A DNA stretch of 64,000 nt, from positions 124,001 through 188,000 of the IMG/VR virus record IMGVR_UViG_3300036766_000194. One strand, 5' to 3'. Shown one piece after another: positions 1,598 through 24,067 of the stretch. How positions within the stretch are numbered: position 1 is the stretch's first letter; every line of letters starts with the position of its first letter. Made by a program: the position numbers and the translations under genes. The notes under the pieces are model-generated. The model saw only the letters and a list, made by a program, of their open reading frames with translations, was not told the origin of the DNA and ran no database searches.

Positions 1598-1686
1598 GGA
1601 GCGGACGCCCTGTTGGAATGGGCACCTGTCTGTAAAACAGGAGTCCCCTGCGGATATTGTGGGTTCGAATCCCTCTCGCTCCACCA
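1598..1686 (+). tRNA. tRNA-Tyr(GTA)
   Basis: cloverleaf, CCTGT-CT GTA AA-ACAGG, long variable arm, CCA end. Confidence 0.92.
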
Positions 1687-1698
1687 AGTTTTATCTTT

Positions 1699-1784
1699 GC
1701 GCGAGTGGTGGAATGGCAGACACGCTGTCCTCAGAAGGCAGTCCTCGAAAGAGGGTGGAGGTTCAAATCCTCTCTTGCGCACCA
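1699..1784 (+). tRNA. tRNA-Leu(CAG)
   Basis: cloverleaf, long variable arm, A73, CCA. Confidence 0.93.
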
Positions 1785-1786
1785 AT

Positions 1787-1873
1787 GCCGAAGTGGCGGA
1801 ACTAGGCAGACGCGGCTGGCTCAAACCCAGTTGGTTAACAGCCATGGGGGTTCAAATCCCTCCTTCGGTACCA
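1787..1873 (+). tRNA. tRNA-Leu(CAA)
   Basis: cloverleaf, long variable arm, CCA. Confidence 0.93.
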
Positions 1874-1942
1874 AGTTTTTGGAGTTTACTGTGGTTTAGT
1901 TTAGAAAGGAGTAAACTAGGATAAACTCAGTAACTAGTTTGT

Positions 1943-2029
1943 GCGGGTATGGCGGAACTGGCAGACGCGTTGGACTTAAAATCCAATGGCCGCAAGGCCG
2001 TGGGGGATCGTGGCCCTCTACCCGTACCA
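1943..2029 (+). tRNA. tRNA-Leu(TAA)
   Basis: cloverleaf, atypical T-loop ATCGTGG, CCA. Confidence 0.88.
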
Positions 2030-2042
2030 AAGTTTTGATTTT

Positions 2043-2126
2043 CGGCGAGTGGCGTAATGGCAGCCGCGCTAGACTTAGAATCTAGTCCTTAAATGGGTGT
2101 GGGTTCGAATCCCTCCTCGCCGACCA
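2043..2126 (+). tRNA. tRNA-Leu(TAG)
   Basis: CTAGA-CT TAG AA-TCTAG, CCA. Confidence 0.92.
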
Positions 2127-2132
2127 AAATTT

Positions 2133-2218
2133 GCACCTGTGCCGGAACTGGCATACGGGCACGGCTGAGAACCGTGGAGCGAAAGCTCTTGTGAGTTCGA
2201 CTCTCACCAGGTGCACCA
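2133..2218 (+). tRNA. tRNA-Leu(GAG)
   Basis: CACGG-CT GAG AA-CCGTG, CCA. Confidence 0.93.
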
Positions 2219-2223
2219 ATATT

Positions 2224-2275
2224 CGCTAAGGATGGCGGAACTAGGCAGACGCATCCTTTAGGAACCCCAGTAGCG
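2224..2275 (+). pseudogene. tRNA-Leu D-arm remnant or tRNA-like hairpin
   Basis: 2233-2252 is identical to the D-arm region of Leu(CAA) at 1794-1813; no anticodon loop or T-arm. Confidence 0.5.
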
Positions 2276-2337
2276 AGTCCGGTTTTGATATGTGATATTA
2301 TATAGAGGAAGGGGTTTCTATATAAGATAACCTATAT

Positions 2338-2427
2338 GGGAAGTTGGCAGAGTGGCCTATTGTGCTGGTTTGCTAAACCAGAATGCTCGAAAGGGCATCA
2401 GAGGTTCGAATCCTCTACTTCCCGCCA
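2338..2427 (+). tRNA. tRNA-Ser(GCT)
   Basis: cloverleaf, long variable arm, G73, CCA. Confidence 0.93.
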
Positions 2428-2431
2428 ATTT

Positions 2432-2521
2432 GGACGGTTGACAGAGTGGCCTATTGTGCACGCCTGGAAAGCGTGATTACCCGAAAGGGTAACGAGTGTT
2501 CGAATCACTCACCGTCCGCCA
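2432..2521 (+). tRNA. tRNA-Ser(GGA)
   Basis: cloverleaf, long variable arm, G73, CCA. Confidence 0.93.
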
Positions 2522-2525
2522 GATT

Positions 2526-2675
2526 ATGAATCTAAAATGCAAGTGTGGTGAGGACAAATGGGAAGTTGTACAGAAAGCTGATGGTAAGAAGACTCTTACC
2601 TGCTTGTCTTGTGGTGCTGAGATTTTAATTTTCTTACTACTTCATCCTGAAAATAAGGATGTGAAGTGGGAGTAA
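2526..2675 (+). CDS. small Zn-ribbon protein (49 aa) inside tRNA array 1
   Basis: MNLKCKCGEDKW...TCLSCG; fills the tRNA spacer almost exactly. Confidence 0.55.
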   Translation: MNLKCKCGEDKWEVVQKADGKKTLTCLSCGAEILIFLLLHPENKDVKWE

Positions 2676-2682
2676 AGAGTTT

Positions 2683-2769
2683 GGAAGATGTGAGCGATGG
2701 CCGCTCGCTCGTCTCGAAAACGAGTCAAGCCGAAAGGCATAGGGTGTTCGATTCACCCATCTTCCGCCA
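2683..2769 (+). tRNA. tRNA-Ser(CGA)
   Basis: CTCGT-CT CGA AA-ACGAG, long variable arm, CCA; atypical D-arm. Confidence 0.88.
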
Positions 2770-2772
2770 AAT

Positions 2773-2855
2773 GGAAAGATCTGCCGACGGCAAAGGCAAT
2801 CTGTCTTGAAAACAGACGCACCGAAAGGTGCACGGTTCGACTCCGTATCTTTCCT
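2773..2855 (+). tRNA. tRNA-Ser(TGA), no encoded CCA
   Basis: TCTGT-CT TGA AA-ACAGA, long variable arm, acceptor stem GGAAAGA/TCTTTCC. Confidence 0.82.
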
Positions 2856-2873
2856 CATTAGTGAACTTTCTAT

Positions 2874-3194
2874 ATGGGTATAAAGTTCACAGTGTACAAA
2901 ACAACGAATCTTAAGAATGCCAAATTCTACCTTGGCTCTCATAAGACCGTTAATCCGAACGATAGCTATCTGGGTTCGGGTACACTTATCCTACGGGCGA
3001 TAGCCAAGTATGGAGAAGAGAACTTCAAAAAAGAAGTTCTCTTCGTATACGATAACGCTGAGAAAGCATTTAAGAAAGAATTTGAATTGGTAGAGGCTGA
3101 GAAGCAGGATAAACTCTGCTATAATTTAAGGCAGGGCGGCAGCGGTGGATTTGGGTCTTTGGTCGAAAGGACAATTTATTCTTATCTTGCGTGA
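2874..3194 (+). mobile_element. GIY-YIG (Seg-like) homing endonuclease, truncated
   Basis: VYKTTN..N.KFYLGSH, YLGSG and YNL..GG motifs; ends right after the catalytic domain; sits in a tRNA array. Confidence 0.8.
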
Positions 3195-3233
3195 AGATGG
3201 AAAACCTGATTTACAACTCGCTGAGTAGATTTC

Positions 3234-3322
3234 GCTGATGACCGTTGGTACGGGGAACCGCCTTATAAGCGGTCGCTCTAGATTAGAGCTTCTTTAGGGT
3301 TCGATTCCCTACGTCAGCACCA
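3234..3322 (+). tRNA. tRNA-Ile(TAT) with long variable arm
   Basis: acceptor GCTGATG/CGTCAGC-A-CCA, ACCGC-CT TAT AA-GCGGT, variable arm GCTCTA-gat-TAGAGC, T-loop TTCGATT. Confidence 0.85.
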
Positions 3323-3326
3323 ATTC

Positions 3327-3358
3327 AAGAGGCTACTCAGTTTCGCAGCCTCTTTTCT
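3327..3358 (+). terminator. terminator ending tRNA array 1
   Basis: AAGAGGCT...AGCCTCTT followed by a T-rich tract. Confidence 0.6.
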
Positions 3359-3398
3359 CAGCCTCTTTTCGCTTTTTCAACCTCTTATAGAGGGATAA

Positions 3399-5483
3399 AT
3401 GAAAGTATTCGTATTGATGGAAAATAGTAACCCTGTAGGGGTTACAAAATCCAAAACAAAGGCTGAGAAGTGGCTCTTCTCTCCCGACAACGACTACCTT
3501 ACGTTTGAAATGGAAGACGTCCTCAAGTCAGAAGAGAAAGCTCCCGCTGCTCCTGTTGAAGAAAAAGATAAGACTCCTCAAGAACATCTCCTCCGTAATG
3601 TGGATAAATTAGAAACTCAAATAGAACAAGCCGATAAGAAACTTAAAGAAAATATAGAGCAGTTGAAGAAGTTTAAGCGTAAGTCTAGCGTCCCTAAAGA
3701 AGCAGCTGTAAACTACAAAGAAATGTTTAAAAAATTTCTTGAAGCTGTTCCTAAATTTGAAGGGGCTGTAAATCAAGAAATTTCCTGGGCTAAGGAACAT
3801 TTAGAAAAGAAAGATCGTATCGTTTGGTATCTCCGTTGGATTCGTCTCGGTATGATACAAGATGCGGAAAACACCGAACAATTGCCCAAAGGAACCTTAC
3901 ATAAAGAGCTAGATGCTCTAAAAATTAAAAGTGGGAAGCAATACACCCCAGCGGACATCATTCGTGATGACTGGCGTTTTAAACGGGATCTTCAACACTA
4001 CATGAGCGTGGCCGATCAAGAAATGCAGTCTAAGCAATTTGGATATGAAACTCCTTTCGAACTCATGACTGAATTAAAGACCATTGACGATAAATTTAAG
4101 GAAAAGGTGCAGGAAGACGCTCGTCTATTAGAACCCCAAGAAGATGACAAAGTATTAATCAAGTTTCCTGATGGTTGGGCCTGGTGGGCATTGAACCGTG
4201 GAGTTTGCTCTGAGGAAGCTGAAGCAATGGGACATTGCGGTAATCAAGGAATGGTCACAGGAAATCAAATCATAAGTTTACGTGAGCCTAAAAGCAAAGG
4301 TGGTAAGAATTATTGGGTACCTCACCTGACTTTTATTCTTGACAAGGATACCGGGATGTTGGGAGAGATGAAGGGGCGGGGTAACGAGAAGCCAGCTGCT
4401 CGTTATCATCCATACATCATAGAATTGTTGGAAGGTGATCGTATCAAAGGAATTCGCGGTGGCGGGTATCAACCTTCCCACAATTTTGCTATGAATGACC
4501 TGTCGGAAGAAGATCGCACCAAGTTGGAAGAAGATAAGCCAGAACTTATGACTTTGCGTCGTTATATGGCGAAGAATAAAAACAAAATTGATGACTATGT
4601 TATTGAGAAGACTCAGGTTCTTCTAGGGCTAAATTCCGAAACATATGATGAACATAACAAGGGATGGACTATTGAAACTTGGAAAAGTGTAGAAAATTTT
4701 GTAGAAGAAAGGGGTAACAGGCAAGCTCGATGGCTTATGAAGTATGAAACTGGGAGAGAGACTCTAGATGTAGATTATGTAAATGAAAATGACGCCTTAG
4801 ATTTCATTGATCGTCTTCCCGATGCTGTGGTGAAGAATATTGGTTTATCATTAGAACAGAACCGTGCCGATGAATTAAAAAAATTCAGAGAAAACTATCG
4901 CCCGTCTGCGCCACATCCCCGGCGTCGGCAGTATACCTGGGAACCAGACAATAGTGGAGATATAAAAGACTTCATAAAATATCTAGAAGAAGAAGGAAAA
5001 AATTCAGAGGTAATGGATAACTTACGTACCGCTTATCGTTATGGGGTAGAAAGCGGAACCCTAAGTCGTATGTCTGAGGTTCTAACCAGAGCCGTGGAAG
5101 AAGCCACAGACAGTTTCGAACGTATTAAGATAGTGTATGAAGGAAACAATGTTTACTATGGCAAAATCTTCGCAGTTCTCAAATTGGTTGACGCTGTTGA
5201 CATAGCTATGGAATGTGAAGACGAGGGAAGCTGTACTTCTGATCCTACCGAAACTCTTGAGACCCTAAAAGTAGAGGCAAGTGAACAAGACGATTACTAC
5301 GATTTTGATGAAAAATATGCCATAAAGCACCTAATAGAAGTGTACGGCGAAGCTCCCGAAGTACCCGAAAAGACTAAAAAGCCAGTAGAGAATAAGAGTA
5401 GGAAGAAAAAGAAGAAACTCAAGTCTAGCTTTCTTTTAGAGGGAGATCAAATTGTCCGCCACACTACCAATACTGACACATAG
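3399..5483 (+). CDS. large phage protein with a PcfJ-like domain
   Basis: EAEAMGHCG...ISLR...PHLT...EMKGRGNEKP pattern; GAGGG SD. Confidence 0.55.
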   Translation: MKVFVLMENSNPVGVTKSKTKAEKWLFSPDNDYLTFEMEDVLKSEEKAPAAPVEEKDKTPQEHLLRNVDKLETQIEQADKKLKENIEQLKKFKRKSSVPKEAAVNYKEMFKKFLEAVPKFEGAVNQEISWAKEHLEKKDRIVWYLRWIRLGMIQDAENTEQLPKGTLHKELDALKIKSGKQYTPADIIRDDWRFKRDLQHYMSVADQEMQSKQFGYETPFELMTELKTIDDKFKEKVQEDARLLEPQEDDKVLIKFPDGWAWWALNRGVCSEEAEAMGHCGNQGMVTGNQIISLREPKSKGGKNYWVPHLTFILDKDTGMLGEMKGRGNEKPAARYHPYIIELLEGDRIKGIRGGGYQPSHNFAMNDLSEEDRTKLEEDKPELMTLRRYMAKNKNKIDDYVIEKTQVLLGLNSETYDEHNKGWTIETWKSVENFVEERGNRQARWLMKYETGRETLDVDYVNENDALDFIDRLPDAVVKNIGLSLEQNRADELKKFRENYRPSAPHPRRRQYTWEPDNSGDIKDFIKYLEEEGKNSEVMDNLRTAYRYGVESGTLSRMSEVLTRAVEEATDSFERIKIVYEGNNVYYGKIFAVLKLVDAVDIAMECEDEGSCTSDPTETLETLKVEASEQDDYYDFDEKYAIKHLIEVYGEAPEVPEKTKKPVENKSRKKKKKLKSSFLLEGDQIVRHTTNTDT

Positions 5484-7922: not shown

Positions 7923-7923
7923 G

Positions 7924-9771: not shown

Positions 9772-9948
9772 ATGAAAAACACAATAATCCGTAATCAACT
9801 TCTACAAGCCATGGGAATTTCTTCGTCTATCAGTCAGATTGATGTAACTGACGTTAGTCTTGAACATCTCATTGCCATAAAACAAACCGCTCAGCAATTG
9901 CACCAATTGTTGAAGGAAATCACTCTTTCTATCCCCAAGGAACAGTAG
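9772..9948 (+). CDS. small hypothetical protein (58 aa)
   Basis: AAGGAG SD; MKNTIIRNQLLQAM... Confidence 0.45.
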   Translation: MKNTIIRNQLLQAMGISSSISQIDVTDVSLEHLIAIKQTAQQLHQLLKEITLSIPKEQ

Positions 9949-10197
9949 GATAGATAGAGGCAAAGGAAGCTGCCTGTGATCTCATGTATCTTCATGGATG
10001 GGAAACCCTTGTATTGAAAAATGTTGGTTGGTCGAATGTGTGGATGCGCATCCCTTTCGTGTTTTTGTGATGAAGGATTACACTGCCACATTGGATCCGT
10101 GTGAAGCGCAGCGATTCGATACGAAAGAAGAAGCAGAGACTTTCATTAACACCAGGTGAAAATGCAGGCAGTGGAGTTCACATTCTGGTAAACCTTC

Positions 10198-11352
10198 TTA
10201 TTCTACTTTAAATCCACCCATACGGGCAGCTTCCTTAGCTGTTAAGGCAGATCCTTCTAAGCCGCTCTTAATAGGGGCAGGTGCTGATGAGGTTATTTTA
10301 TACCCGCTCTTCGCCGCTCCTGCTGCTCCAGGTAGTTTAGGATCTCTTATACAAAACATCTCATACAGGAACAAGGGAAGCACATCGGAGGATAGAGTTT
10401 GACTCTGACTCCACTTCATAAAAAATTCTGTCATAGTGGGAACGTTGCCAAACTGAGTCAGAACATCACTCAGTTCATCGGTAAATACGCTCCGAGCATA
10501 ATAGCCAAACATAGCCTCAATGATCTTAGCAGGTTCATAGACGCGGGCTAGTCCATCTATAGCGAATATGGCTTCTTTCTGCTTCTTTTGTAGGACTAAC
10601 GTAAATAAGTCTACTACTCCATCTTCTAGGGTTGTCTCAAGTTGAGATTTCACCAGTTCAACCGTTACATTTCCTAGGGCTGCAATTATATCTAACATCT
10701 TTACCGCATCACGCACTTTGCCCTTAGAGGCACGTGCTATAGCCCTGAGTGCTTCTAGCTCATACGTTACACCATTCTCTACCGATACTGCCGAGAGCAG
10801 CCCGAGAATAGTCTCATCAGCCACTTTAGCAAACCGTATGCGACAACTGCGACTCTTTATCGTGCCTGGGATCTTTTCAGGAGAATTGGTTATGAATATG
10901 AAAATGGCGTCAGTATCAGCAGCTTCTAAGGGTTTTAGATAGACGTCAAAGGCTTCCCGACTAAGACGATGAGCTTCGTCAATCATAGTCACTCGTCTTT
11001 TTCCTAAAATAGGAAGGGATATTCCTACTTCAAGGATATTTCTTGCTTGTTCTACCCCAGAATTTGATGCGGCGTCAACTTCACGGAAATCAGGATGTTG
11101 GTCAATACCATTGGTATCTATTAGATTACAGCTTTCACACTTTCCACAACCAAGAGGATCACTTCCTGTACACATAAGAGCACGGCTGTGGATATATGCG
11201 GTGGTGGTTTTACCGACACCCCGAATACCTTCAAATATGAACCCTCGTAATAGGAACTTATTGAATTTGAGTAACGCCTGTAGAACTTTTATGGCGCGGG
11301 GTTGCCCTACTACTCCATTCCAGTCTTGAGGTCGTTTAGTTATCAGGCTCAT
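10198..11352 (-). CDS. dnaX: DNA polymerase III gamma/tau-like clamp loader
   Basis: RP..W..VVGQ, GIRGVGKTT, C..GCGKCESC, EVDAAS, IDEAH, TIKSRS. Confidence 0.9.
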   Translation of the reverse strand: MSLITKRPQDWNGVVGQPRAIKVLQALLKFNKFLLRGFIFEGIRGVGKTTTAYIHSRALMCTGSDPLGCGKCESCNLIDTNGIDQHPDFREVDAASNSGVEQARNILEVGISLPILGKRRVTMIDEAHRLSREAFDVYLKPLEAADTDAIFIFITNSPEKIPGTIKSRSCRIRFAKVADETILGLLSAVSVENGVTYELEALRAIARASKGKVRDAVKMLDIIAALGNVTVELVKSQLETTLEDGVVDLFTLVLQKKQKEAIFAIDGLARVYEPAKIIEAMFGYYARSVFTDELSDVLTQFGNVPTMTEFFMKWSQSQTLSSDVLPLFLYEMFCIRDPKLPGAAGAAKSGYKITSSAPAPIKSGLEGSALTAKEAARMGGFKVE

Positions 11353-12854: not shown

Positions 12855-13484
12855 TTATTCTCCCCTGGCAAAATCTTTGGTCTTGAGTTTCACAATCAGG
12901 CGTGCGCCGTTTTTGTCAAACAAGGTTTCCAGAGGACGACCTACCAAACCCTCAGCATCCTTGTCAGGATCCACTGAACAACGGGATTTGAACCCCTTAC
13001 GCACGAATTCGGTGGCTTCTTCCAAGGTCATTTCCCCAAAGTCGGGAACAACCCTAAGTCCGAGTTTACTTGCCACGTCGGCGACATTCTCATAAGAAAG
13101 CCACCATTTGTTGTCAACGAGGACGTCAAAGACGATAAATTTTTTAGTGGGAGAAAGCCCTCCGCCATTCTGGATTCCTGCGCCATATCCTTCACCGTAT
13201 ATTACAACATCAGTTTCGGGAAAGAGATCGTTCAACAGAACAGAACTGATATTTTCGTGAAGCCAGTTGGTCAAATCAGCGGGAAGTTGTGCGTTGTCTG
13301 TCTTACCACCAAAGGACCGACTGTTTGACTTCCAGATGCAGCGAATGTTCATTCCGTCCACTTTTTCCGACCAGCGCCAGGATTTCAAGAGGGAGTAGAC
13401 ACGATTCTTAAATACTCCTGGCTTGACCTTGAAAGTGTCGGCATCACGTTCGTACAGCGTTTCAATTTTATGATATTCATTCAT
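12855..13484 (-). CDS. ATP-dependent RNA ligase (Rnl2-like)
   Basis: motif I EKVDGMN, III YGEGYG, IIIa FIVFDV, IV EGLV, V KLK. Confidence 0.88.
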   Translation of the reverse strand: MNEYHKIETLYERDADTFKVKPGVFKNRVYSLLKSWRWSEKVDGMNIRCIWKSNSRSFGGKTDNAQLPADLTNWLHENISSVLLNDLFPETDVVIYGEGYGAGIQNGGGLSPTKKFIVFDVLVDNKWWLSYENVADVASKLGLRVVPDFGEMTLEEATEFVRKGFKSRCSVDPDKDAEGLVGRPLETLFDKNGARLIVKLKTKDFARGE

Positions 13485-14525: not shown

Positions 14526-14543
14526 GTTCTCACGCCTTGAAGG

Positions 14544-15791
14544 TTAGTTAGTAAGTGCAACGCCCTGCCAAACGAAGTGGACACGACGGTTAAGTTGATA
14601 ACAGGATTCGCTCTCTGTCGGAGTAGGACAGAAGATGTTCGTCTTGCCCTTGGTGTCAGCGGCAAGGATGCGATGCGCATCAATTCCAGCTGCCAAAATA
14701 GCCTTATGGACAGTGTTGACTCGGTTCCTGCCGAGTTTCAGGTTATGATCGCTAGACCCGCGAACATCACAGGCGCTAACGATGGTGAAAGTAACTGCCG
14801 GATGAGCAACGAGGAACGCAATGTTCTGCTCCAAAACATACTGTTGCTTACTGTCAACGTTTGCCTTGTCATAAGCAAAAAACACGTCCTGCATTCTCTC
14901 ATTGAAAATAACTTCACCCGTCTTCACAGGAAGAGGAGTGACCGGAGTTACAGGGGTTGGTGTCACCGTGACGATGGGTTGTTGAAGAAGCACCGTGACA
15001 GGTTCAATCTTAACCTGTATGGGCACCCGAGGAACTACTGCAGCCACCGGAGCAGGAGCAGGTTCCGTCATACAATCTGCCATCGTGATGCCAGCCTTCT
15101 TTGCATTGGGTTCCTGAACAAGCAGCTTACAAGCTGCCAGCTTGGAACCAAGCAAAGCAAAAGAGCGAGCCGTTTCACGAATGTCGCAACCCTTGTCAAT
15201 CTTACCCCCGCCCATAGAGAATCCGAATCCTGCAGCTTGACCCGCGCCGCCGTATCCCTTAATACAAGGGGCAGAAGGCAAAGCATCGGGAGCAATAGCC
15301 GAAGCGGTTTGACGAACCTGCTTGTAGGTCGTGTTCACCGTGGTCGAATTGCCCGAGGAGTTATTGGACTGTTCCTGACCCTGGCTGGAATTACCCGAGT
15401 TGCTCACGCCTGCCGTGGCAGACGCAGAGCCACCCTGGCCGCCAGTGGCGGTATTGGTGTTAGTATTGGACGAGTTGCCGGAATTCTTGATGGTAGCGTT
15501 TCCGCCCTCGCCAATTCCGATGCCAACTCCCGTTGAGGTTGAAGTTGAGGAAGAAGTCGAAGAACTGGAGCCGCCGTTTCCGACGCCGCCGTTTCCGACG
15601 CCGCCATTTCCACCATTTCCACCATTTCCACCATTTCCACCATTTCCACCGTTGTTGCTGTTGGGACAGTTGGGATTGCCATTGCCGTGATCCTGGTTAT
15701 TGCCACAGTCGTCAGCAAATGCTGTGCCGACAGTGAAAGCAAGAGCAAGAATCAGCATAGAGATACGAAAGATACTACGATTGATATTCAA
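14544..15791 (-). CDS. exported Gly/Asn/Ser-rich protein with a C-terminal OmpA/Pal peptidoglycan-binding domain
   Basis: signal peptide (AFA-DD), GGN repeats, VFFAYDK...CDVRGS...N..LG..R...NRRV. Confidence 0.85.
   Translation of the reverse strand: MNINRSIFRISMLILALAFTVGTAFADDCGNNQDHGNGNPNCPNSNNGGNGGNGGNGGNGGNGGVGNGGVGNGGSSSSTSSSTSTSTGVGIGIGEGGNATIKNSGNSSNTNTNTATGGQGGSASATAGVSNSGNSSQGQEQSNNSSGNSTTVNTTYKQVRQTASAIAPDALPSAPCIKGYGGAGQAAGFGFSMGGGKIDKGCDIRETARSFALLGSKLAACKLLVQEPNAKKAGITMADCMTEPAPAPVAAVVPRVPIQVKIEPVTVLLQQPIVTVTPTPVTPVTPLPVKTGEVIFNERMQDVFFAYDKANVDSKQQYVLEQNIAFLVAHPAVTFTIVSACDVRGSSDHNLKLGRNRVNTVHKAILAAGIDAHRILAADTKGKTNIFCPTPTESESCYQLNRRVHFVWQGVALTN
15570..15652 (-). repeat. coding tandem repeats (GGN 9-mers, GGVGN 15-mers)
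   Basis: (CCATTTCCA)n and (CCGCCGTTTCCGACG)n. Confidence 0.85.
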
Positions 15792-18194: not shown

Positions 18195-18226
18195 GTGAAT
18201 ATTCTACCTTGTCTTTTTAGGATGAG

Positions 18227-18899: not shown

Positions 18900-20240
18900 T
18901 CACGCTGGACCAAATTTAGGATTACATTCTAAACAATCGCATCCCTCAGAATGACTATCACTGAACCCTATTGGGAGGAGGTCTTTATTATAAATATCAT
19001 AGGTACCTTCAAATTGCTTACTCTCCAGGGGTTTTTGAATAGCAGCAATTTTCCTAACAAAGTCTCTAAATATTTCCTCTGTAACAACAAAGCCAGGAGC
19101 CTCAAATATATGAGCCAGAAGATCCGCCACCCCTGGATCCTTATCTTCTTCAGCCGCTTGATACAACATGAACAAGTCCTTCTTTAGGGGATTACTAAGA
19201 ATCTCATTCACTAACACGGCATGAGGATCCATAGTTACTTCAGCTTCGGGTTCAGTGTAGCGCGTAATAGGTTGGCGAGTGCCATTCTTCAAAGCGGTCA
19301 CTACTTCCTGAGAACGTTCTACAGAATTCCTCAATTGTTCTGCTTCACGCTCCTCGTAAGGACGTTTATTAGCCGACGCAATATATCCCACAACCGAAGT
19401 GAATATGGCTATCTTATTGTCTGGGTAATTTCCTTGATAGACCATTTGTAGAACAGCATCGCGTTCAAACTCGGTGAGAGTCCAATTCTCTTCTTCAGCC
19501 CACTTAGTAATTTCCATCTTCTCAAGTATTCTTGCTGCTGTAACGCGGAGCAAGGTGCGAAAGGTTAGAGCCTTTTCCAATAAGTCTACTTCTTGCCAGA
19601 CTATGGGATTATGCTCAGTGACCTCCACCGTAGTTATATCCTCTACTACAACTCCCGTATCAATATGAATCCACTCTTGTATATTGGCTACTTCGGCATA
19701 GTCTACAATCAATCCTAGCAGGTCACACTTTATACACGCAAAGATAGACTTAGCTAGTTTATTGGGGAGACCTGCTTCCTTAGAGAAATAATTAGGACAT
19801 TCCTGTTTAATAAATTGCCAGATGGTTACGTCGGGTTGGGTAAAGAACATCTTAGGATCATAACCCTCTTTGCGTACGACTTCAGCAAAGTGGCGACCGT
19901 TTTCAAGGATCTCAGCATATTGTTCAAGGTCTCCTGTAGAAGAACTGAACACTCCACTAGTCGTAACAAACTGCTTACCATAGCGGGCATCTCCCCCAAA
20001 TAGTGCTTTACGGTCATACACAAAGCAACATTCAATTTCACGAAAGCGAGGATCGTGAACCATCTCCCAAGTAGGACCCAGCGTCTTTACAACTCCAATG
20101 TGTTCGTCAAATAGATACCCGGTAATGATTTGACAATACTCATATTCTTCCTGAGTAACCTCCTGATCATCAGCCTGGATACGATATTCAAACTTGGCAT
20201 CATCTACTAACCCAAACAATCCTCGTAACTTACGATCCAT
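18900..20240 (-). CDS. hypothetical protein (446 aa)
   Basis: long ORF, GAGG SD, C-terminal HSEGCDCLEC. Confidence 0.7.
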   Translation of the reverse strand: MDRKLRGLFGLVDDAKFEYRIQADDQEVTQEEYEYCQIITGYLFDEHIGVVKTLGPTWEMVHDPRFREIECCFVYDRKALFGGDARYGKQFVTTSGVFSSSTGDLEQYAEILENGRHFAEVVRKEGYDPKMFFTQPDVTIWQFIKQECPNYFSKEAGLPNKLAKSIFACIKCDLLGLIVDYAEVANIQEWIHIDTGVVVEDITTVEVTEHNPIVWQEVDLLEKALTFRTLLRVTAARILEKMEITKWAEEENWTLTEFERDAVLQMVYQGNYPDNKIAIFTSVVGYIASANKRPYEEREAEQLRNSVERSQEVVTALKNGTRQPITRYTEPEAEVTMDPHAVLVNEILSNPLKKDLFMLYQAAEEDKDPGVADLLAHIFEAPGFVVTEEIFRDFVRKIAAIQKPLESKQFEGTYDIYNKDLLPIGFSDSHSEGCDCLECNPKFGPA

Positions 20241-20755
20241 CGCTTTTGTCCTCTAGACTTTTAATACTGAATTCTTAACATGGGAAGGCAATTTGTCCCA
20301 ACATTCTAAACAAGCCGCCTTAACTGGTGGACCGGAGGATAATGTATGAACAAAAATGTGTTCAATTCTACTCGGACGGTCCGTAAGAAGTACATTTTAA
20401 ACAGTTAAGGGGGTGATCCTAATATCTAGCACGATTTACCTCGGGTTGGACGGAGACCCGAGGATTTCGTGTGTTCAAATGAATAATTTCTTATTAAAGA
20501 TTATGTATAATCTGAAGATTGCCCTGCGCAATAGTCATGGTCCCAACAGAGATGTTCTACGCTTATGCGTGTCCAATCTCCATCTTCTTTTCGTTTCCAC
20601 TTAGTATTCATCCTAGTAGGTGTTTTTCCACAAAATTTATCACAATATCTAAACAGATATTCACAAGGACGGGAAGATTTGTATTCAGATTTGAGGACTA
20701 GGTTTTCTCTATCACACAAATTACAAGTTTCTGTCATGATAGTATTATTACTCAC

Positions 20756-20965
20756 ATGAGACCCTTTGAATGTAAAGACTGTAAAGAATCCTTCCCCACA
20801 GCAGAGTTCTTTGTGTATCACATTGACACCTGTAAACCGAAAAAGAACATAGATCTCACTCTAAAAGAACTGATAGAAATAAAGAATTACCTAGAGGCGT
20901 TCTCAATTCCGGGAGAAAGAAAGTTACATAAGTTGATTAAAAGACTCAACGAGGTGTTGTCATGA
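20756..20965 (+). CDS. C2H2-like Zn-finger protein
   Basis: FECKDCKESF.....F..H...C. Confidence 0.5.
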   Translation: MRPFECKDCKESFPTAEFFVYHIDTCKPKKNIDLTLKELIEIKNYLEAFSIPGERKLHKLIKRLNEVLS

Positions 20966-21099
20966 TCGGTTGGCTACTTTTCTCGGTGGTCGTAAAGAAT
21001 ACTACTACGACATTGCCGATTGGGTAAGTGACATGGAAGACTCTAAAATTCCTGAGTACATCCGTAGATGGATAGAACGTAATAATCCCGAACCAGACT

Positions 21100-21321
21100 A
21101 TGAAGAGGAAAATGAGCAAATTTCTACATAGTGGATTTGAAATGCGTGAGGGACCGTCCAGTGACGATTATCGTTACGCGGCCCTTATCCCCGAGTCAGA
21201 ACGTTGTTCTACTTGTAAGGGGTTGAGGATCGTTAGAATACAACATTCCTGGACCGGGGAAGATTGGCAGGAATGTTACGTTTGCCGAGGGACGGGGAGA
21301 AAATCATATTCTTTATTGTAG
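21100..21321 (+). CDS. small DnaJ-type Zn-finger protein
   Basis: CSTCKG...CYVCRGTG. Confidence 0.55.
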   Translation: MKRKMSKFLHSGFEMREGPSSDDYRYAALIPESERCSTCKGLRIVRIQHSWTGEDWQECYVCRGTGRKSYSLL

Positions 21322-21566
21322 GAGTAATTTTATTGTTGTGTTTCGGTATGTTTATGTCTTCTAGAGAAGACACCGTTCAGTCTAGAACGAATTCTTCACG
21401 TTTTGCTATCGTTTTCGAAGAACATCTGAACAGTCACATGATAGAAGTTTGGGAAGATAAAGAAACTCATCAAGAAATCGTTTGCGTCTATAATAAAATG
21501 GCTTCGCCTTCATGTTTCTTATCGGGAAGGTCATTTCCCCTTACAGAGACGCCAACCCAGCGTTAA
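21264..21566 (+). CDS. small membrane-anchored protein
   Basis: N-terminal TM segment. Confidence 0.5.
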   Translation: MAGMLRLPRDGEKIIFFIVGVILLLCFGMFMSSREDTVQSRTNSSRFAIVFEEHLNSHMIEVWEDKETHQEIVCVYNKMASPSCFLSGRSFPLTETPTQR

Positions 21567-21649
21567 TCCACATCCCGCCGCAAATCCGTAAGCAAACATA
21601 GAAATAAGTTGAAACAGAAGAAATTGCATAGATAATCCCCAATCTAAAT

Positions 21650-22273
21650 TCAAGACTTTACCCTTGGTTCTACTTCTTCGTGCTTCGGCTTATAGTGTCC
21701 GGTCGCCCATAAAGACATAATCTTTATAACATCTTCATCTTCATACCCCTGTACTTCTTTACACACGTCAAAAGTACTTTCGGAAAACGAAGGAAGTTTG
21801 TCTACATCTCCACGCTCCATTAAAACAATGCTACTCATCACAGTTGTGCCGTTGGAATCTTCCGTAAAGAACCCTACAACACGAGAACGAGAAGGATCAA
21901 CAAATATACTAACCTTAAAGGAAGAATCCTTATCAGGAATCCAGTGAAATTCTAATAGACGAATAGTGTCGTCATCGGGATAGATGTTTATGCTGGTTAG
22001 GTTGAACACAATAGGTTGCTTTAAGGACTGGGTAATTCCCGTCTTATTGTCATAATAAGATATCAATACAAAAGAGGGGTCAGAGTCGGCTAATTTTATG
22101 TGATAAGGAGTAAATTTTCCCTTCCCGCAAAATGAAGCATTGTATTCTCCAACCACTGGTTTAAGACTAGATTTCCATTCTTTTTGAGGGATTTCAATGT
22201 ATTCGGATTTTAATTGTTCACTTGTGATTGAAGGAAATAAGAAAATTGCTAGTATGATTGCTATAATCTTCAT
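21650..22273 (-). CDS. secreted hypothetical protein
   Basis: signal peptide MKIIAIILAIFLF; GGGAG SD. Confidence 0.6.
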   Translation of the reverse strand: MKIIAIILAIFLFPSITSEQLKSEYIEIPQKEWKSSLKPVVGEYNASFCGKGKFTPYHIKLADSDPSFVLISYYDNKTGITQSLKQPIVFNLTSINIYPDDDTIRLLEFHWIPDKDSSFKVSIFVDPSRSRVVGFFTEDSNGTTVMSSIVLMERGDVDKLPSFSESTFDVCKEVQGYEDEDVIKIMSLWATGHYKPKHEEVEPRVKS

Positions 22274-22346
22274 GAAGACTCCCGAACTACTCTTATGTTT
22301 TGTGGGTTTAAGTTTTTATTTATCTTGATTAGCGGGAATGAAGAAG

Positions 22347-22422
22347 TGGTAGGACCACAAGGATTCGAACCCTGGTATCGGAGGTAGAAGCTCCGCGCTC
22401 TGTCCGATTGAGCTATGGTCCC
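22347..22422 (-). tRNA. tRNA-Arg(TCT)
   Basis: CGGAG-CT TCT AC-CTCCG, CCA. Confidence 0.93.
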
Positions 22423-22426
22423 ACTT

Positions 22427-22502
22427 TGGAGGCCGGAGCGGGGTACGATCCCGCACACTTGGTTTAGGAAACCAGCGCACTGTCCATTTGTGCTATCCAG
22501 CC
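22427..22502 (-). tRNA. tRNA-Arg(CCT)
   Basis: anticodon loop TT CCT AA; T-loop ATCGTAC; CCA. Confidence 0.88.
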
Positions 22503-22507
22503 AAACT

Positions 22508-22582
22508 TGGTAGTCCCCACAGGACTCGAACCTGCAAAACGATGTTCGTAGCATCGTGTGATATCCATTTCACCAAGGGACC
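22508..22582 (-). tRNA. tRNA-Arg(ACG)
   Basis: CGATG-CT ACG AA-CATCG, CCA. Confidence 0.93.
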
Positions 22583-22585
22583 ACA

Positions 22586-22661
22586 TGGTATTCCCGGAGA
22601 GATTCGAACTCTCGTATCATCCTTCGGAGGAATGCGCCTGAGTCCACTAGGCTACGGGAAT
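22586..22661 (-). tRNA. tRNA-Arg(CCG)
   Basis: CATTC-CT CCG AA-GGATG, CCA. Confidence 0.93.
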
Positions 22662-22737
22662 AAACTCTATTAAACGCCGGATAGACTACAAAATTCTTCC
22701 GAAATCGTCTATCCGGTCACTATGACCGGGTATCTGG

Positions 22738-22812
22738 TGGATCCCAGAACTGGATTCGAACCAGTATGAATTCGTTCAGAGCGAATTAGGCTACCTATTG
22801 CCTCATCTGGGA
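22738..22812 (-). tRNA. tRNA-Gln(CTG)
   Basis: ATTCG-CT CTG AA-CGAAT, T1-A72, CCA. Confidence 0.9.
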
Positions 22813-22844
22813 ATTGAAACTCATGTCGTACAAGATGAAAAGCG

Positions 22845-22966
22845 GTAATGATAAGGTTCACCGCCGTCATCATTACGGAGAGCTTCTGTGACCTTTGGCA
22901 ATGCGCATTCACACTGGTCATGCTCTTCCTGCGGACACCCGCCGTTTAAACGAACCATATCATTAC
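22845..22966 (-). ncRNA. candidate structured RNA in a tRNA spacer
   Basis: 14/15-bp closing helix plus three nested helices. Confidence 0.5.
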
Positions 22967-22979
22967 TCCTTTCTAAAAT

Positions 22980-23054
22980 TGGCTCTCCGAGTAGGACTTG
23001 AACCTACAACCTTTCGGTTAACAGCCGACTGCTCCGCCATTGAGCTACCGGAGA
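22980..23054 (-). tRNA. tRNA-Asn(GTT)
   Basis: canonical Asn body, CCA. Confidence 0.93.
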
Positions 23055-23060
23055 ATTGAT

Positions 23061-23090
23061 AGGAGATGATAGTCGCGACTATCATCTCCT
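23061..23090. repeat. perfect 30-bp palindrome
   Basis: AGGAGATGATAGTCG-CGACTATCATCTCCT. Confidence 0.9.
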
Positions 23091-23097
23091 TCTTAAC

Positions 23098-23174
23098 TAG
23101 TCGGCCAATTCTTGAATTTTGGCATTTCCAGCTCTGCCAATGGCGGCTGGCGTCTTTCCGTTAAACGACGACTA
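23098..23174 (-). ncRNA. candidate tRNA-like four-way-junction RNA
   Basis: TAGTCG/CGACTA closes three hairpins; the first loop has GG, the last contains TTCAAG. Confidence 0.45.
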
Positions 23175-23176
23175 AA

Positions 23177-23252
23177 TGGCTGGGGCGGGAGGACTCGAAC
23201 CTCCAAGTACCTGAGTAACAGTCAGGCGCTGTACCGATTGAGCCACACCCCA
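23177..23252 (-). tRNA. tRNA-Asn(GTT), second divergent copy
   Basis: CCTGA-CT GTT AC-TCAGG, T1-A72, G73, CCA. Confidence 0.9.
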
Positions 23253-23270
23253 ATTGAACTTCTACAACTC

Positions 23271-23346
23271 TGGTGGAGCAGATGGGATTTGAACCCACAT
23301 CCTTCGCATTGCAAGTGCGCTGCGCCGCCAATTGCGCCACTGCCCC
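23271..23346 (-). tRNA. tRNA-Ala(TGC)
   Basis: G3:U70, anticodon TGC, CCA. Confidence 0.94.
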
Positions 23347-23355
23347 AAAGTTAAG

Positions 23356-23429
23356 TGGTAGGGCTAGGGAGAATCGAACTCCCGTCTACTGATTAAGAGT
23401 CAGCAGCTTTACCATTAAGCTATAGCCCT
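23356..23429 (-). tRNA. tRNA-Lys(CTT)
   Basis: GCTGA-CT CTT AA-TCAGT, CCA. Confidence 0.93.
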
Positions 23430-23439
23430 AAAATTGCCC

Positions 23440-23572
23440 ATATTTTTATCCCACGTCGGCTTTACGTTACCTTACGATAACGAGCGTGTGATGCCTTAGA
23501 CTTACGTCCGTAACAGGCGGCATCCACCCGGCTTATTTGCGTGAACGGAGGCAAGCTACCCCCGTCACGCTT
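23440..23572 (-). ncRNA. candidate structured RNA with GNRA-capped hairpins
   Basis: three stems, two GTAA tetraloops on the minus strand. Confidence 0.5.
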
Positions 23573-23579
23573 CATAAAA

Positions 23580-23655
23580 TGGTATCCCCGGCAGGATTTG
23601 AACCTGCGTATCTGGTTTCGTAGACCAGTACCTGAGTCCACTAGGCTACGGGGAC
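23580..23655 (-). tRNA. tRNA-Arg(ACG), second copy
   Basis: CTGGT-CT ACG AA-ACCAG, CCA. Confidence 0.93.
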
Positions 23656-23666
23656 AAAGTAACTTC

Positions 23667-23742
23667 TGGTGGGTCCGGAGGGTTATGATCCCCCATAACG
23701 CTGTTTAAAAGACAGCTGCTTTGCCAGTTAAGCTACGAACCC
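23667..23742 (-). tRNA. tRNA-Lys(TTT)
   Basis: GCTGT-CT TTT AA-ACAGC; T-loop ATCATAA; CCA. Confidence 0.9.
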
Positions 23743-23752
23743 ATTTAAAACT

Positions 23753-23829
23753 TGGGGTGTAGGACGGGTCTCGAACCCGCTTTAACCGGATTCACAGTCC
23801 GGCGCGTCACCTGTTTCGCCTCCTACACC
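23753..23829 (-). tRNA. tRNA-His(GTG)
   Basis: encoded G-1:C73, CCGGA-CT GTG AA-TCCGG, CCA. Confidence 0.92.
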
Positions 23830-23831
23830 AT

Positions 23832-23993
23832 CGTTTAGTGCTTCCTTGTAAAAGGCAGTTTCAGTCCATTTCTTTTTCAAATGGGCATGAACAGCCATAT
23901 CAGTTACTCCTAGTTTCCTAGCACACGGTCCACCATTGTTGTTTTCTCATGAACCCTTCAATGCCCTTTGTAAGAGATACTGAAAGTCACGAA
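23832..23993 (-). ncRNA. candidate rod-shaped RNA between tRNA-Trp and tRNA-His
   Basis: nested long-range helices TTTCAGT/ACTGAAA and CAAAGGGCAT/ATGCCCATTTG. Confidence 0.45.
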
Positions 23994-23995
23994 TG

Positions 23996-24067
23996 CAGGA
24001 TGGGAGGGACTCGAACCCCCGTAAACGGTTTTGGAGACCGTTGTCCTGGCCGCTGAACGACCATCCT
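23996..24067 (-). tRNA. tRNA-Trp(CCA), no encoded CCA end
   Basis: ACGGT-CT CCA AA-ACCGT, A1-U72, G73. Confidence 0.9.

What the first reader, a model, noticed from the sequence alone, without database searches (positions are those of the whole stretch)
1598..24067. tRNAs sorted into separately regulated modules: long-arm versus short-arm
Seen: array 1 holds only long-variable-arm tRNAs (Tyr, 5 Leu, 4 Ser, long-arm Ile-UAU). Array 2 holds only short-arm tRNAs for Arg, Lys, Asn, His, Gln, Trp and Ala. No Met, Gly, Pro, Thr, Val, Phe, Asp, Glu or Cys tRNA was found in the window. Inference: each array is a rescue module with its own sensor, perhaps matched to different host tRNase specificities. 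For comparison, mammalian SLFN11 prefers long-arm tRNAs, while PrrC and PARIS hit tRNA-Lys. An RNA ligase and an RlaP-like transferase in the window fit a tRNA-conflict theme. Prediction: further arrays elsewhere in the genome carry leaders spelling the missing amino acids.
Basis: partly seen in the sequence, partly recalled or inferred. Interest (0 to 1): 0.8.

Follow-up and report, generated by a model that had tools for sequence, protein, structure and literature searches.

The report
Codon-sensing leaders gate phage tRNA arrays
In this jumbo-phage fragment, each of two tRNA gene clusters follows a tiny reading frame written in the codons those tRNAs read, plus a stop-or-go RNA hairpin, so the phage probably makes each set only when ribosomes run short of it; the long-arm/short-arm split is inherited history, not the rule.

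Summary
Array 1 (1598-3322, +) holds 11 long-arm tRNAs: Tyr, 5 Leu, 4 Ser and an odd long-arm tRNA with anticodon UAU. Array 2 (24067-22347, -) holds 13 short-arm tRNAs. The important feature lies in front of them. Both arrays follow an identical 20-mer and a short ORF. Each ORF touches 10 of the 11 anticodon species of its own array, the best score among about 60,000 codon windows of the window. Array 1 then has a classic terminator and antiterminator. The cultured relative Tunturiibacter phage Tunturi_5 and dozens of soil metagenome contigs share this design in three modules, and leader content follows array content. In 50 non-redundant pairs, 42% of leader codons fit the own array against 13% for other arrays (p=4e-9). 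The best reading is ribosome-mediated attenuation that senses the supply of the tRNAs it controls. Arm length is not the organising rule. Of 22 related Leu/Ser/Tyr modules, 21 also carry short-arm tRNAs, and long-arm tRNAs occur in other modules. Matching to host tRNases is untested. I found no prior description. There are no expression data, and array 2 lacks a U-tract terminator.

The parts
1393..1412 (+). 20-mer AATCGCTAATTAACCTTTTT, shared exactly with the array-2 upstream region. It overlaps a sigma-70-like -35 (TTAACC), then 18 nt, then TATTAT (1402-1431).
   Evidence: Only two copies in the window at up to 3 mismatches, with 0.02 expected. Only these two exact copies in all of IMG/VR. 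Promoter-like hit. Function as a promoter is inferred.
1438..1521 (+). Leader ORF 1, 27 codons plus stop: MRHILLSSYLSSSSLLTGSEPMRGSVE. There is no Shine-Dalgarno sequence, and the ATG lies 7 nt after the -10-like hexamer.
   Evidence: Resembles module-1 leaders of relatives, such as MRILLSSLSSYCL... in L136; the similarity was judged by eye, not by an alignment statistic.
1447..1485 (+). Run of 13 consecutive codons (ATA CTC TTA TCA TCG TAT CTA TCA TCC AGT AGT TTG CTT), all read by array-1 tRNAs. They touch 10 of its 11 anticodons; only Leu-CAG is missed.
   Evidence: Unique maximum of 67,827 stop-free 13-codon windows in six frames. The next best elsewhere is 10/13 cognate and 8 anticodons.
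1489..1502 (+). Antiterminator strand (GGAUCCGAGCCGAU) inside the distal part of leader ORF 1. It pairs with 1543-1556, the 5' half of the terminator.
   Evidence: Constrained folding of the nascent transcript. The pairing forms when a ribosome is held at codons 6-11 and is masked when the ribosome reaches codon 16 or beyond, or the stop codon.
1546..1585 (+). Intrinsic terminator: 11-bp GC-rich stem (1546-1556 / 1566-1576), 9-nt loop, then UUUUGUUUU. It lies 12 nt before tRNA-Tyr.
   Evidence: leader region MFE -55 kcal/mol, z = -5.0 against shuffles. Also.
1598..3322 (+). Array 1: Tyr, Leu x5, Ser x4 and the long-arm tRNA(UAU) at 3234-3322. It is interrupted by a tRNA-Leu 5' fragment (about 2234-2253), a 49-codon Cys-rich ORF (2527-2676) and a GIY-YIG endonuclease remnant (2874-3194).
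3328..3360 (+). Hairpin (AGAGGCU ... AGCCUCU) plus a U-run after the last tRNA. It is the likely end of the array-1 transcription unit and overlaps a 13-nt tandem repeat.
   Evidence: Read from the sequence; tandem repeat. Its role is inferred.
24289..24308 (-). Second copy of the 20-mer, followed by a similar GTATT.TAT box.
24195..24251 (-). Leader ORF 2, 18 codons plus stop: MNSTKRNRSEAKRQWHRA. Thirteen of its 17 codons are read by array-2 tRNAs and touch 10 of 11 anticodons; only Arg-CCT is missed.
   Evidence: Unique maximum of 57,636 17-codon windows for anticodon coverage. The next best elsewhere are 9 and 8.
24074..24181 (-). Three-segment switch. A is GGCGGUAAGCUG (24181-24170). B is CAGCUUACCGC (24096-24086). 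C is GCGGUAAG (24081-24074). B can pair either with A (long range) or with C (a local hairpin 6 nt before tRNA-Trp). No U-run follows C.
   Evidence: The mutually exclusive pairings are shown by the sequence. What they control is not resolved.
22347..24067 (-). Array 2: Trp, His, Lys, Arg, Lys, Ala, Asn, Asn, Gln, Arg x4, all with short variable arms. Two spacers are strongly structured.
12855..13484 (-). RNA ligase family protein (context only).
   Evidence: PF09414, E=7.8e-16.
27369..28346 (-). RlaP-like nucleotidyltransferase (context only).
   Evidence: PF10127, E=1.7e-26.

Best explanation
The window is part of a 300-kb jumbo phage genome from sediment. Its two tRNA arrays are two transcription units that start from the same type of promoter.

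Each begins with a very short leader ORF that works as a test track. Its codons sample almost every tRNA species encoded downstream.

Array 1 has the classic four-segment attenuator. If any sampled aminoacyl-tRNA is scarce, the ribosome stalls in the 13-codon run. The distal leader segment then pairs with the 5' half of the terminator, and RNA polymerase reads on into the tRNA genes. If all are plentiful, the ribosome runs to the stop codon and covers that segment. The terminator then forms and the array stays off.

The result is a negative-feedback supply sensor for tRNA, one per module. It would also switch the array on automatically if host tRNAs are depleted or cut.

The pure long-arm make-up of array 1 is a lineage-specific state of an old, inherited Leu/Ser/Tyr module. 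It is not selection on arm length.

Shown here: the tRNAs, the leader ORFs, the codon match, the hairpins, and conservation and co-variation in relatives. Inferred: translation of the leaders, the promoter, the polarity of the switch, and what array 2's switch controls.
For: 1. In-window statistics. Each leader is the single best stretch of the whole 64-kb window, in six frames, for coverage of its own array's anticodons. Each sits between the shared 20-mer and its array.

2. Cross-specificity. Leader 1 has 15/26 own-array codons against 3/26 for the other array. Leader 2 has 13/17 against 2/17.

3. Structure. Array 1 has a strong terminator 12 nt before the first tRNA (z=-5). Its antiterminator strand lies inside the distal leader and is free only when a ribosome is held in the codon run.

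4. Conservation at depth. Tunturi_5 shares only 48% TerL identity and about 35% CCA-enzyme identity. It has three arrays, each behind a short ORF and a canonical terminator. Its leader-by-array matrix is diagonal: 14/31, 24/36 and 33/48 on the diagonal, 2-11 off it.

5. Blind test. In IMG/VR and metagenome relatives I took the longest ATG ORF ending just 5' of a terminator, without looking at its codons. Fifty non-redundant leader/array pairs gave an own-array cognate fraction of 0.42 against 0.13 for other arrays. Own exceeded other in 47/50 (Wilcoxon p=4e-9).

6. Sampling property. In 46 non-redundant modules, 251 of 264 amino acids that have a tRNA in the module also occur in its leader (95%), against 55% for amino acids without one. 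The odds ratio is 16.

7. Co-variation. Cys codons and a Cys tRNA appear together in Tunturi module A. Asp and Glu codons appear in module-1 leaders of the contigs whose module 1 carries Asp and Glu tRNAs. ATA appears in leader 1 here, where tRNA-UAU is in array 1, and in the module-3 leader of L136, where its long-arm tRNA-UAU sits.

8. Peptide order drifts while composition is kept, as expected for a codon sensor and not for a functional peptide.

9. Antiterminator complementarity follows each terminator's own sequence. Own duplex energy is -12.6 against -10.8 kcal/mol for cross pairs, better in 45/63 (p=0.001).

10. Controls. Arrays of unrelated large phages (XacN1, RsoM2USA, Vibrio D479, and 31 sites near CCA-adding enzymes) show no such leader plus terminator.

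11. Established knowledge (my own, not tested here): leader-peptide attenuators respond to tRNA level as well as to amino acid. The classic case is the Salmonella hisR mutants. The his leader is used as a read-out of codon reading speed (PMC4046918, abstract).
Against: There are no expression data. No RNA run was listed for this DNA, and the DNA runs say nothing about the leader.

Most leaders lack a Shine-Dalgarno sequence (8 of 46 have one). Leader 1's ATG sits only 7 nt after the -10-like hexamer, so translation would have to be leaderless.

Array 2 has alternative pairings but no U-tract. A ribosome at its stop codon would abut segment A without covering it, so the classic logic is not demonstrated there.

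The antiterminator signal is weak or absent in module 3 of relatives. With the full sequence present, the thermodynamic optimum always contains the terminator, so the argument is kinetic.

tRNA-UAU is separated from the rest of array 1 by an endonuclease remnant that holds a promoter-like site. It may have its own start.

The relatives are related to each other, so the p-values overstate independence.
Confidence: 0.72

Rival explanations
1. The arrays are rescue modules sorted by variable-arm length, so that each answers a different host tRNase: one that prefers long-arm tRNAs, and one that targets Lys or Arg-type short-arm tRNAs.
For: The window shows a perfect long/short split. RNA ligase, an RlaP-like protein and, just upstream, a CCA-adding enzyme give a tRNA-maintenance context. 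An attenuator would indeed fire if host tRNAs were cleaved.
Against: Arm length does not follow module in relatives. Twenty-one of 22 Leu/Ser/Tyr modules also hold short-arm tRNAs (Cys, Met, Asp, Glu). Long-arm tRNA-UAU, Lys-UUU and Arg-ACG sit in other modules, and some tRNA-Leu are short-armed. The leaders sample about all isoacceptors rather than a nuclease's target. No nuclease or host is known for this phage.
Confidence: 0.08
2. The switch has the opposite polarity, a feed-forward design. Translation of the leader is needed to open a structure, so an array is expressed only when its tRNAs are already sufficient, or simply when translation is active.
For: In array 2 a weak hairpin spans the last leader codons and the stop codon, and a terminating ribosome would melt it. 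No U-tract terminator follows. The leaders sit at the very 5' end.
Against: In array 1 and in all three Tunturi_5 modules (read from the folds), the stop codon lies 23-32 nt before the terminator stem; the L136-1 stop also lies well upstream of its stem. A terminating ribosome therefore cannot melt the terminator, while it does cover the antiterminator strand. Making more tRNA only when tRNA is already plentiful has no obvious use.
Confidence: 0.1
3. The short ORFs are not sensors. They are small functional peptides or untranslated sequence, and the hairpins are ordinary terminators of upstream genes or processing signals. The arrays are made constitutively.
For: There is no Shine-Dalgarno sequence in most cases. 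There are no expression data. The 5' half of leader 1 is also part of a long hairpin.
Against: This does not explain why each ORF is the window-wide maximum for its own array's codons. It does not explain why composition is kept while peptide order drifts, or why leader content changes with array content across about 50 non-redundant modules. It does not explain the terminator sitting between a promoter-like element and the tRNAs.
Confidence: 0.07
4. The grouping of Leu, Ser and Tyr tRNAs reflects recent tandem duplication and anticodon switching inside the array. On this view the long-arm tRNA-UAU is a recent derivative of a neighbouring tRNA-Leu or tRNA-Tyr.
For: A 20-nt fragment identical to the D-arm region of tRNA-Leu-CAA lies in the array (about 2234-2253), so duplication does happen here.
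Against: tRNA-UAU is at most 50% identical to every class II tRNA compared, from this phage or Tunturi_5, so it is not a recent copy of a neighbour. L136 carries a similar long-arm tRNA-UAU with the same AGAUUAG arm loop, in a different module. The block is therefore old.
Confidence: 0.03

Closest known systems
Leader-peptide transcription attenuators of enterobacterial amino-acid operons (trp, his, leu, thr, ilvGMEDA, pheA) and of pheST
   Same: A short leader ORF carries a run of regulatory codons. An intrinsic terminator lies before the first regulated gene. An antiterminator strand in the distal leader is free only when the ribosome stalls. Multi-amino-acid leaders are known, for example thr (Thr and Ile) and ilv (Leu, Val and Ile).
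   Different: Here the regulated genes are the tRNAs themselves, so the sensed molecule is the product. One leader samples 10 different tRNA species across 4-7 amino acids. The element is phage-encoded. Most leaders lack a Shine-Dalgarno sequence. Array 2 lacks a U-tract.
T-box riboswitches
   Same: tRNA status controls transcription read-through by a choice between terminator and antiterminator.
   Different: A T-box binds one uncharged tRNA directly through a specifier codon and the T-box sequence, without translation, and controls synthetase or amino-acid genes. No T-box or any other Rfam cis-regulatory family matches here.
Large tRNA arrays of phages (T4, T5, KVP40, XacN1, huge phages), read as codon-usage compensation or as replacements for host tRNAs cut by defence nucleases such as PrrC or PARIS
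   Same: A clustered, near-complete set of isoacceptors: all six Leu, six Ser and six Arg codons are covered. tRNA repair and maturation genes lie nearby. The phage's AT-rich codons are served, for example ATA is 27% of its Ile codons.
   Different: In the comparator phages read here, class I and II tRNAs are interspersed and no codon-matched leader plus terminator precedes the arrays. I found no report of attenuator control of such arrays.
Tunturiibacter phage Tunturi_5 (PP885688; PMC11924767)
   Same: It is the nearest cultured relative (TerL 48% identical). It has three leader-plus-terminator tRNA modules, with Leu/Ser/Tyr together in the first.
   Different: Its GC content is 58% against 43% here. 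It has 43 tRNAs for all 20 amino acids, and Cys sits inside the Leu/Ser/Tyr module. Its paper lists the tRNAs and annotates one leader as hypothetical protein gp308, but does not mention leaders or attenuation.

Membership tests
Ribosome-mediated (leader-peptide) transcription attenuator | Short ORF upstream of the regulated genes, enriched in codons for the sensed aminoacyl-tRNAs | tested here: met
   Both leaders are window-wide maxima for own-array codons. The same holds in relatives.
Ribosome-mediated (leader-peptide) transcription attenuator | Intrinsic terminator (GC hairpin plus U-run) between the leader and the first regulated gene | tested here: inconclusive
   Met for array 1 (1546-1585) and for the Tunturi_5, L135 and L136 modules. 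Not met for array 2, where the hairpin has no U-run.
Ribosome-mediated (leader-peptide) transcription attenuator | Antiterminator that excludes the terminator and is controlled by ribosome position | tested here: inconclusive
   Clear by constrained folding for array 1 and for Tunturi modules B and C. Across 63 modules own complementarity beats cross pairs (p=0.001), but not in module 3. Array 2 has exclusive A:B and B:C pairings whose coupling to the ribosome is unclear.
Ribosome-mediated (leader-peptide) transcription attenuator | The leader is translated, and read-through responds to aminoacyl-tRNA supply | not testable with these tools
   No RNA run was listed. Only 8 of 46 leaders have a Shine-Dalgarno-like motif.
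Ribosome-mediated (leader-peptide) transcription attenuator | Regulated genes are amino-acid biosynthesis or synthetase genes (true of all classical members) | tested here: not met
   The regulated genes are tRNA genes. This is the point of novelty.
T-box riboswitch | Stem I with specifier loop and the conserved T-box sequence (Rfam RF00230) | tested here: not met
   No hit even at E up to 1 in either leader region.
Class II (long variable arm) tRNA, for the tRNA with anticodon UAU at 3234-3322 | Cloverleaf with a base-paired variable arm of more than 10 nt | tested here: met
   It is 89 nt. It has a 7-bp acceptor stem, a 5-bp anticodon stem with loop CUUAUAA, a variable arm with a 6-bp stem, a normal T arm and encoded CCA. 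The Rfam tRNA score is 29.4 bits. L136 carries a similar 94-nt tRNA-UAU sharing the AGAUUAG arm loop. The D arm is unusually small.
tRNA-Ile (amino-acid identity of the UAU tRNA) | Charged by IleRS | not testable with these tools
   A73, A37, A38 and C29:G41 fit Ile identity elements known from E. coli (my knowledge), but position 4:69 is G:C. Only the anticodon supports the name.
Anti-defence tRNA module matched to a host tRNase | A known nuclease in the host, and phage tRNAs that resist it or replace its targets | not tested
   The host and its defence systems are unknown. Nothing in the sequence speaks to nuclease specificity.

The most novel reading that the evidence does not exclude
A clade of jumbo phages puts its tRNA genes under multi-codon leader-peptide attenuators. 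The clade includes this sediment phage, the cultured Tunturi_5 and many soil and peat relatives. These would be the first tRNA genes known to be controlled by ribosome-mediated attenuation. The system would be a self-correcting controller in which each module's leader reads the pool of the tRNAs it controls. It would therefore also act as an automatic alarm and remedy when host tRNAs are shut off or cleaved.
Probability: 0.6. Interest if true: 0.9.

Novelty: new variant of a known kind. Interest (0 to 1): 0.85.

Why it matters
Attenuation has been a textbook mechanism for fifty years, yet to my knowledge and in the searched literature it has been tied to amino-acid and synthetase genes, not to tRNA genes. 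If this reading holds, several things follow.

- A virus measures translational demand codon by codon and supplies tRNA on demand. This would explain how jumbo phages carry 25-45 tRNA genes without paying for them all the time.
- Any host defence that cuts or depletes tRNAs would trigger the replacement set. This links tRNA arrays to the arms race without needing a dedicated sensor protein.
- The leaders are compact natural reporters of the availability of many tRNAs at once, which could be useful for synthetic biology.
- The idea can be tested now, because Tunturi_5 and its Acidobacteriota host are in culture.
- Phage annotation should look for such mini-ORFs. One of them is currently deposited as a hypothetical protein.

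Tried and rejected
- **Near relatives of this phage.** Megablast against cultured phages found nothing. Neighbours of the arrays (the 694-aa and AAA proteins) gave only distant relatives, or only the phage itself, and no arrays. Tunturi gp279 alone gave no hits. The scan with the CCA-enzyme alignment gave 80 large-phage loci, which served only as negative controls.
- **A third array in this contig.** None lies in 108-128 kb. Two look-ups failed because the start codons were wrong. The rest of the 300-kb contig was not read.
- **RNA evidence.** No run was listed. Laying the DNA runs on 1300-3450 mostly picked up tRNAs of other organisms. Only one other sample (X2) had a contig of this phage, and it did not cover the leader.
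- **T-box or other known RNA families.** None matched.
- **tRNA-UAU as a recent copy of a neighbouring Leu or Tyr tRNA.** Rejected, since identity is at most 50%.
- **Whole-ORF binomial enrichment as a detector.** Too weak. Control sites reach p of about 1e-3 by chance, so I relied on anticodon coverage, codon runs, terminators and own-versus-other comparisons.
- **A second, internal leader in array 2** (ORF from 23905, MAVHAHLKKKW...). It is suggestive but does not stand out in the window-wide scan, so it is left as a side note.

Full report
**What the window is.** It encodes a portal protein, a large terminase and a DNA polymerase. It has no close match among cultured phages. It belongs to IMG/VR contig 3300036766_000194, which is 299,875 bp, comes from a sediment metagenome, and holds the window at about 124-188 kb. 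The nearest cultured relative is the jumbo myovirus Tunturiibacter phage Tunturi_5, with 48% TerL identity and an Acidobacteriota host (PMC11924767).

**The observation.** ARAGORN and Rfam agree on 24 tRNA genes.
- Array 1 (1598-3322, +) holds Tyr, five Leu, four Ser and a tRNA with anticodon UAU. All are 84-90 nt.
- Array 2 (24067-22347, -) holds Trp, His, two Lys, five Arg, Ala, two Asn and Gln. All are 73-76 nt.
- No other tRNA is in the window or in the array spacers.

The split by arm length is therefore real in this window.

**What precedes the arrays.** An identical 20-mer occurs exactly twice in the window, about 45 nt before a tiny ORF in front of each array (2 found, 0.02 expected). 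These are its only two exact copies in all of IMG/VR. It overlaps a sigma-70-like -35/-10 pair.

Leader 1 (1438-1521) reads MRHILLSSYLSSSSLLTGSEPMRGSVE. Its codons 4-16 are thirteen consecutive codons read by array-1 tRNAs. Nearly every one is a different codon, and together they touch 10 of the array's 11 anticodons, including ATA for the odd tRNA-UAU.

Leader 2 (24251-24195, -) reads MNSTKRNRSEAKRQWHRA. It touches 10 of the 11 anticodon species of array 2.

Among roughly 60,000 stop-free codon windows in all six frames, each leader is the unique maximum for its own array. Each is poor in the other array's codons.

**Structure.** The leader-1 RNA folds far better than shuffles (z = -5.0). It shows a long 1:2 hairpin over the ORF and an 11-bp terminator with a U-run 12 nt before tRNA-Tyr. 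I folded the nascent transcript with a ribosome held at different codons. With the ribosome in the codon run, segment 1489-1502 pairs with 1543-1556, the 5' half of the terminator. With the ribosome at codon 16 or beyond, or at the stop, that segment is covered and only the terminator can form. This is the classic attenuator geometry.

Array 2 differs. Segment B (24096-24086) can pair with A (24181-24170) or with C (24081-24074), so a switch is present. No U-run follows, and a terminating ribosome would only abut A. What array 2's switch controls is unresolved. It could be termination without a U-tract, or 5' processing of tRNA-Trp.

**Relatives.** Tunturi_5 carries three arrays:
- Leu/Cys/Leu/Leu/Tyr/Leu/Ser/Ser/Ser;
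- Asn/Gln/Gly/Thr/Pro/His/Ala/Phe;
- Trp/Asp/Met/Lys/Val/Arg/Glu, followed further downstream by Ile-GAT and Gly-TCC.

Each follows a short ORF and a canonical terminator. The leaders spell their own arrays. The first is rich in L, C, S and Y, and includes two Cys codons that match the Cys tRNA. The second is rich in Q, H, T, F, A, P, G and N. The third, deposited as hypothetical protein gp308, is rich in D, I, R, G, K, V, W, E and M. The 3x3 matrix of cognate codons is sharply diagonal.

Using the phage's RtcB as a handle, I fetched 62 viral and 80 metagenomic loci. Dozens of soil and peat contigs show the same three-module layout with recognisably related leaders.

To avoid circularity I chose each leader only as the longest ATG ORF ending just upstream of a terminator.
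- In 50 non-redundant pairs, 42% of leader codons are cognate to the own array against 13% for the other arrays of the same contig. Own exceeds other in 47/50 (p = 4e-9).
- Of the amino acids that have a tRNA in a module, 95% appear in its leader, against 55% of those without one.
- Peptide order drifts while composition is kept.
- Content changes together. Asp and Glu enter the module-1 leader in the contigs whose module 1 carries Asp and Glu tRNAs.
- The upstream segment complementary to each terminator's 5' half follows that terminator's own sequence, clearly for modules 1 and 2 and not for module 3.

Unrelated large phages read as controls show interspersed class I and II tRNAs and no such leaders.

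**What this means for the finding.** Its prediction of further leaders spelling other amino acids is borne out in relatives. In this phage I found only a lone tRNA-Met and no third array between 108 and 197 kb of the contig.

Arm length is not the organising principle. Among 22 non-redundant modules holding Leu/Ser/Tyr tRNAs, only this window's is purely long-arm. The Leu/Ser/Tyr block is contiguous at the 5' end in 20 of the 22 and is usually followed by Met, Asp and Glu, or interrupted by Cys. Arm length itself is plastic in the clade. L136 has a 94-nt tRNA-UAU with the same arm loop as the one here, but in its Trp/Lys module. Relatives also have long Lys-UUU and Arg-ACG, and 76-79-nt tRNA-Leu. 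The split seen here is best read as an inherited Leu/Ser/Tyr module that happens to lack short-arm passengers.

Matching to host tRNase specificities is neither needed nor tested. A supply sensor would, however, respond to any tRNA loss, including cleavage.

**Demand side.** The phage is 43% GC and uses ATA for 27% of its Ile codons, and CTA plus TTA for 38% of its Leu codons. The two arrays serve 20% and 24% of its codons. All six Leu, Ser and Arg codons are covered, so the arrays look like a near-complete decoding set rather than a patch for a few rare codons.

**Caveats.**
- No transcript or ribosome data exist.
- Most leaders lack a Shine-Dalgarno sequence (8 of 46). Several sit 6-9 nt after a -10-like hexamer, so leaderless translation must be assumed.
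- Array 2 lacks a U-tract.
- The relatives share ancestry, so the p-values overstate independence.
- tRNA-UAU lies behind an endonuclease remnant that holds a promoter-like site.

**Novelty.** Seven full-text searches found no description of leader-peptide control of tRNA genes or arrays. The Tunturi paper does not mention it. The library does not cover most subscription journals, so this is absence in what I could search. The mechanism class is known. Applying it to tRNA genes with multi-tRNA sampling leaders appears new: a new variant of a known kind, and of high interest.

Noticed in passing
window 3234-3322; L136:11529-11622: A tRNA with anticodon UAU carries a long, base-paired variable arm and a very small D arm. 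A similar 94-nt tRNA with the same AGAUUAG arm loop is in a Tunturi-like contig. tRNA-UAU genes of five other large phages are 73-79 nt. Which amino acid it carries is unknown.
   Followed up: partly
L129:6579-6663, L135:14969-15060, L136:11707-11792 and other relatives: In Tunturi-like phages, arm length is not tied to amino acid. Lys-UUU is 85-92 nt, ten Arg-ACG genes are 82 nt or longer, and Gly-UCC and Thr-UGU reach 84 nt, all with extended variable regions. Some tRNA-Leu are only 76-79 nt with a 5-nt variable region.
   Followed up: partly
window 2874-3194 (+): A 106-codon remnant of a GIY-YIG homing endonuclease (phrog_314, E=1.5e-32, matching only the middle of the family) sits inside array 1, between Ser-UGA and tRNA-UAU.
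   Followed up: partly
window about 2234-2253: A 20-nt stretch identical to the D-arm region of tRNA-Leu-CAA (1787-1873) lies in a spacer. It is a dead 5' fragment of a tRNA gene.
   Followed up: no
window 23430-23579 and 23055-23176 (-): Two spacers inside array 2 fold far better than shuffles (z = -3.4 and -5.2). The second ends in a perfect 15-bp hairpin just before tRNA-Asn. They may be processing signals, internal stops or small RNAs.
   Followed up: partly
window 23905-23790 (-): An ORF with a strong Shine-Dalgarno sequence starts right after tRNA-Trp and begins MAVHAHLKKKW, using Ala, His, Lys and Trp codons. It runs into tRNA-His. It could be a second, internal sensor or a chance ORF, and it does not stand out statistically.
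   Followed up: partly
window 2527-2676 (+) and 22958-22821 (-): Small Cys-rich ORFs (CxC...CxxC type, 49 and about 45 codons) lie in spacers of both arrays. The first was called as a gene in the JGI annotation.
   Followed up: no
L130:7228-8373, 9878-9953, 10001-10507 (contig 115-119 kb, upstream of the window): A CCA-adding enzyme, a lone tRNA-Met(CAT) with its own promoter-like site, and next to it an HD_4 (SpoT-like) hydrolase domain protein. Together they form a small group of translation and stringent-response genes near the arrays.
   Followed up: partly
window 2773-2856: tRNA-Ser-UGA has no encoded CCA end, unlike the other ten tRNAs of array 1. This fits the phage's own CCA-adding enzyme.
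   Followed up: no
window 15570-15650 (-), inside ORF 14544-15791: Two adjoining perfect or near-perfect tandem repeats (9-nt unit x5.2, 15-nt unit x2.8) lie inside an OmpA-domain protein gene.
   Followed up: no
leaders in the window and in L128, L129, L135, L136, L277-L352: Only 8 of 46 leaders have a Shine-Dalgarno-like motif. Many start 6-9 nt after a -10-like hexamer (for example TATTAT here, TAAAGT in module 2 of relatives). This suggests the leader mRNAs begin at or next to the AUG.
   Followed up: partly
run X2 contig over window 2697-2720: A strain in another sediment sample carries deletions of 7, 2 and 6 nt inside tRNA-Ser-CGA, so this tRNA gene varies between strains.
   Followed up: no
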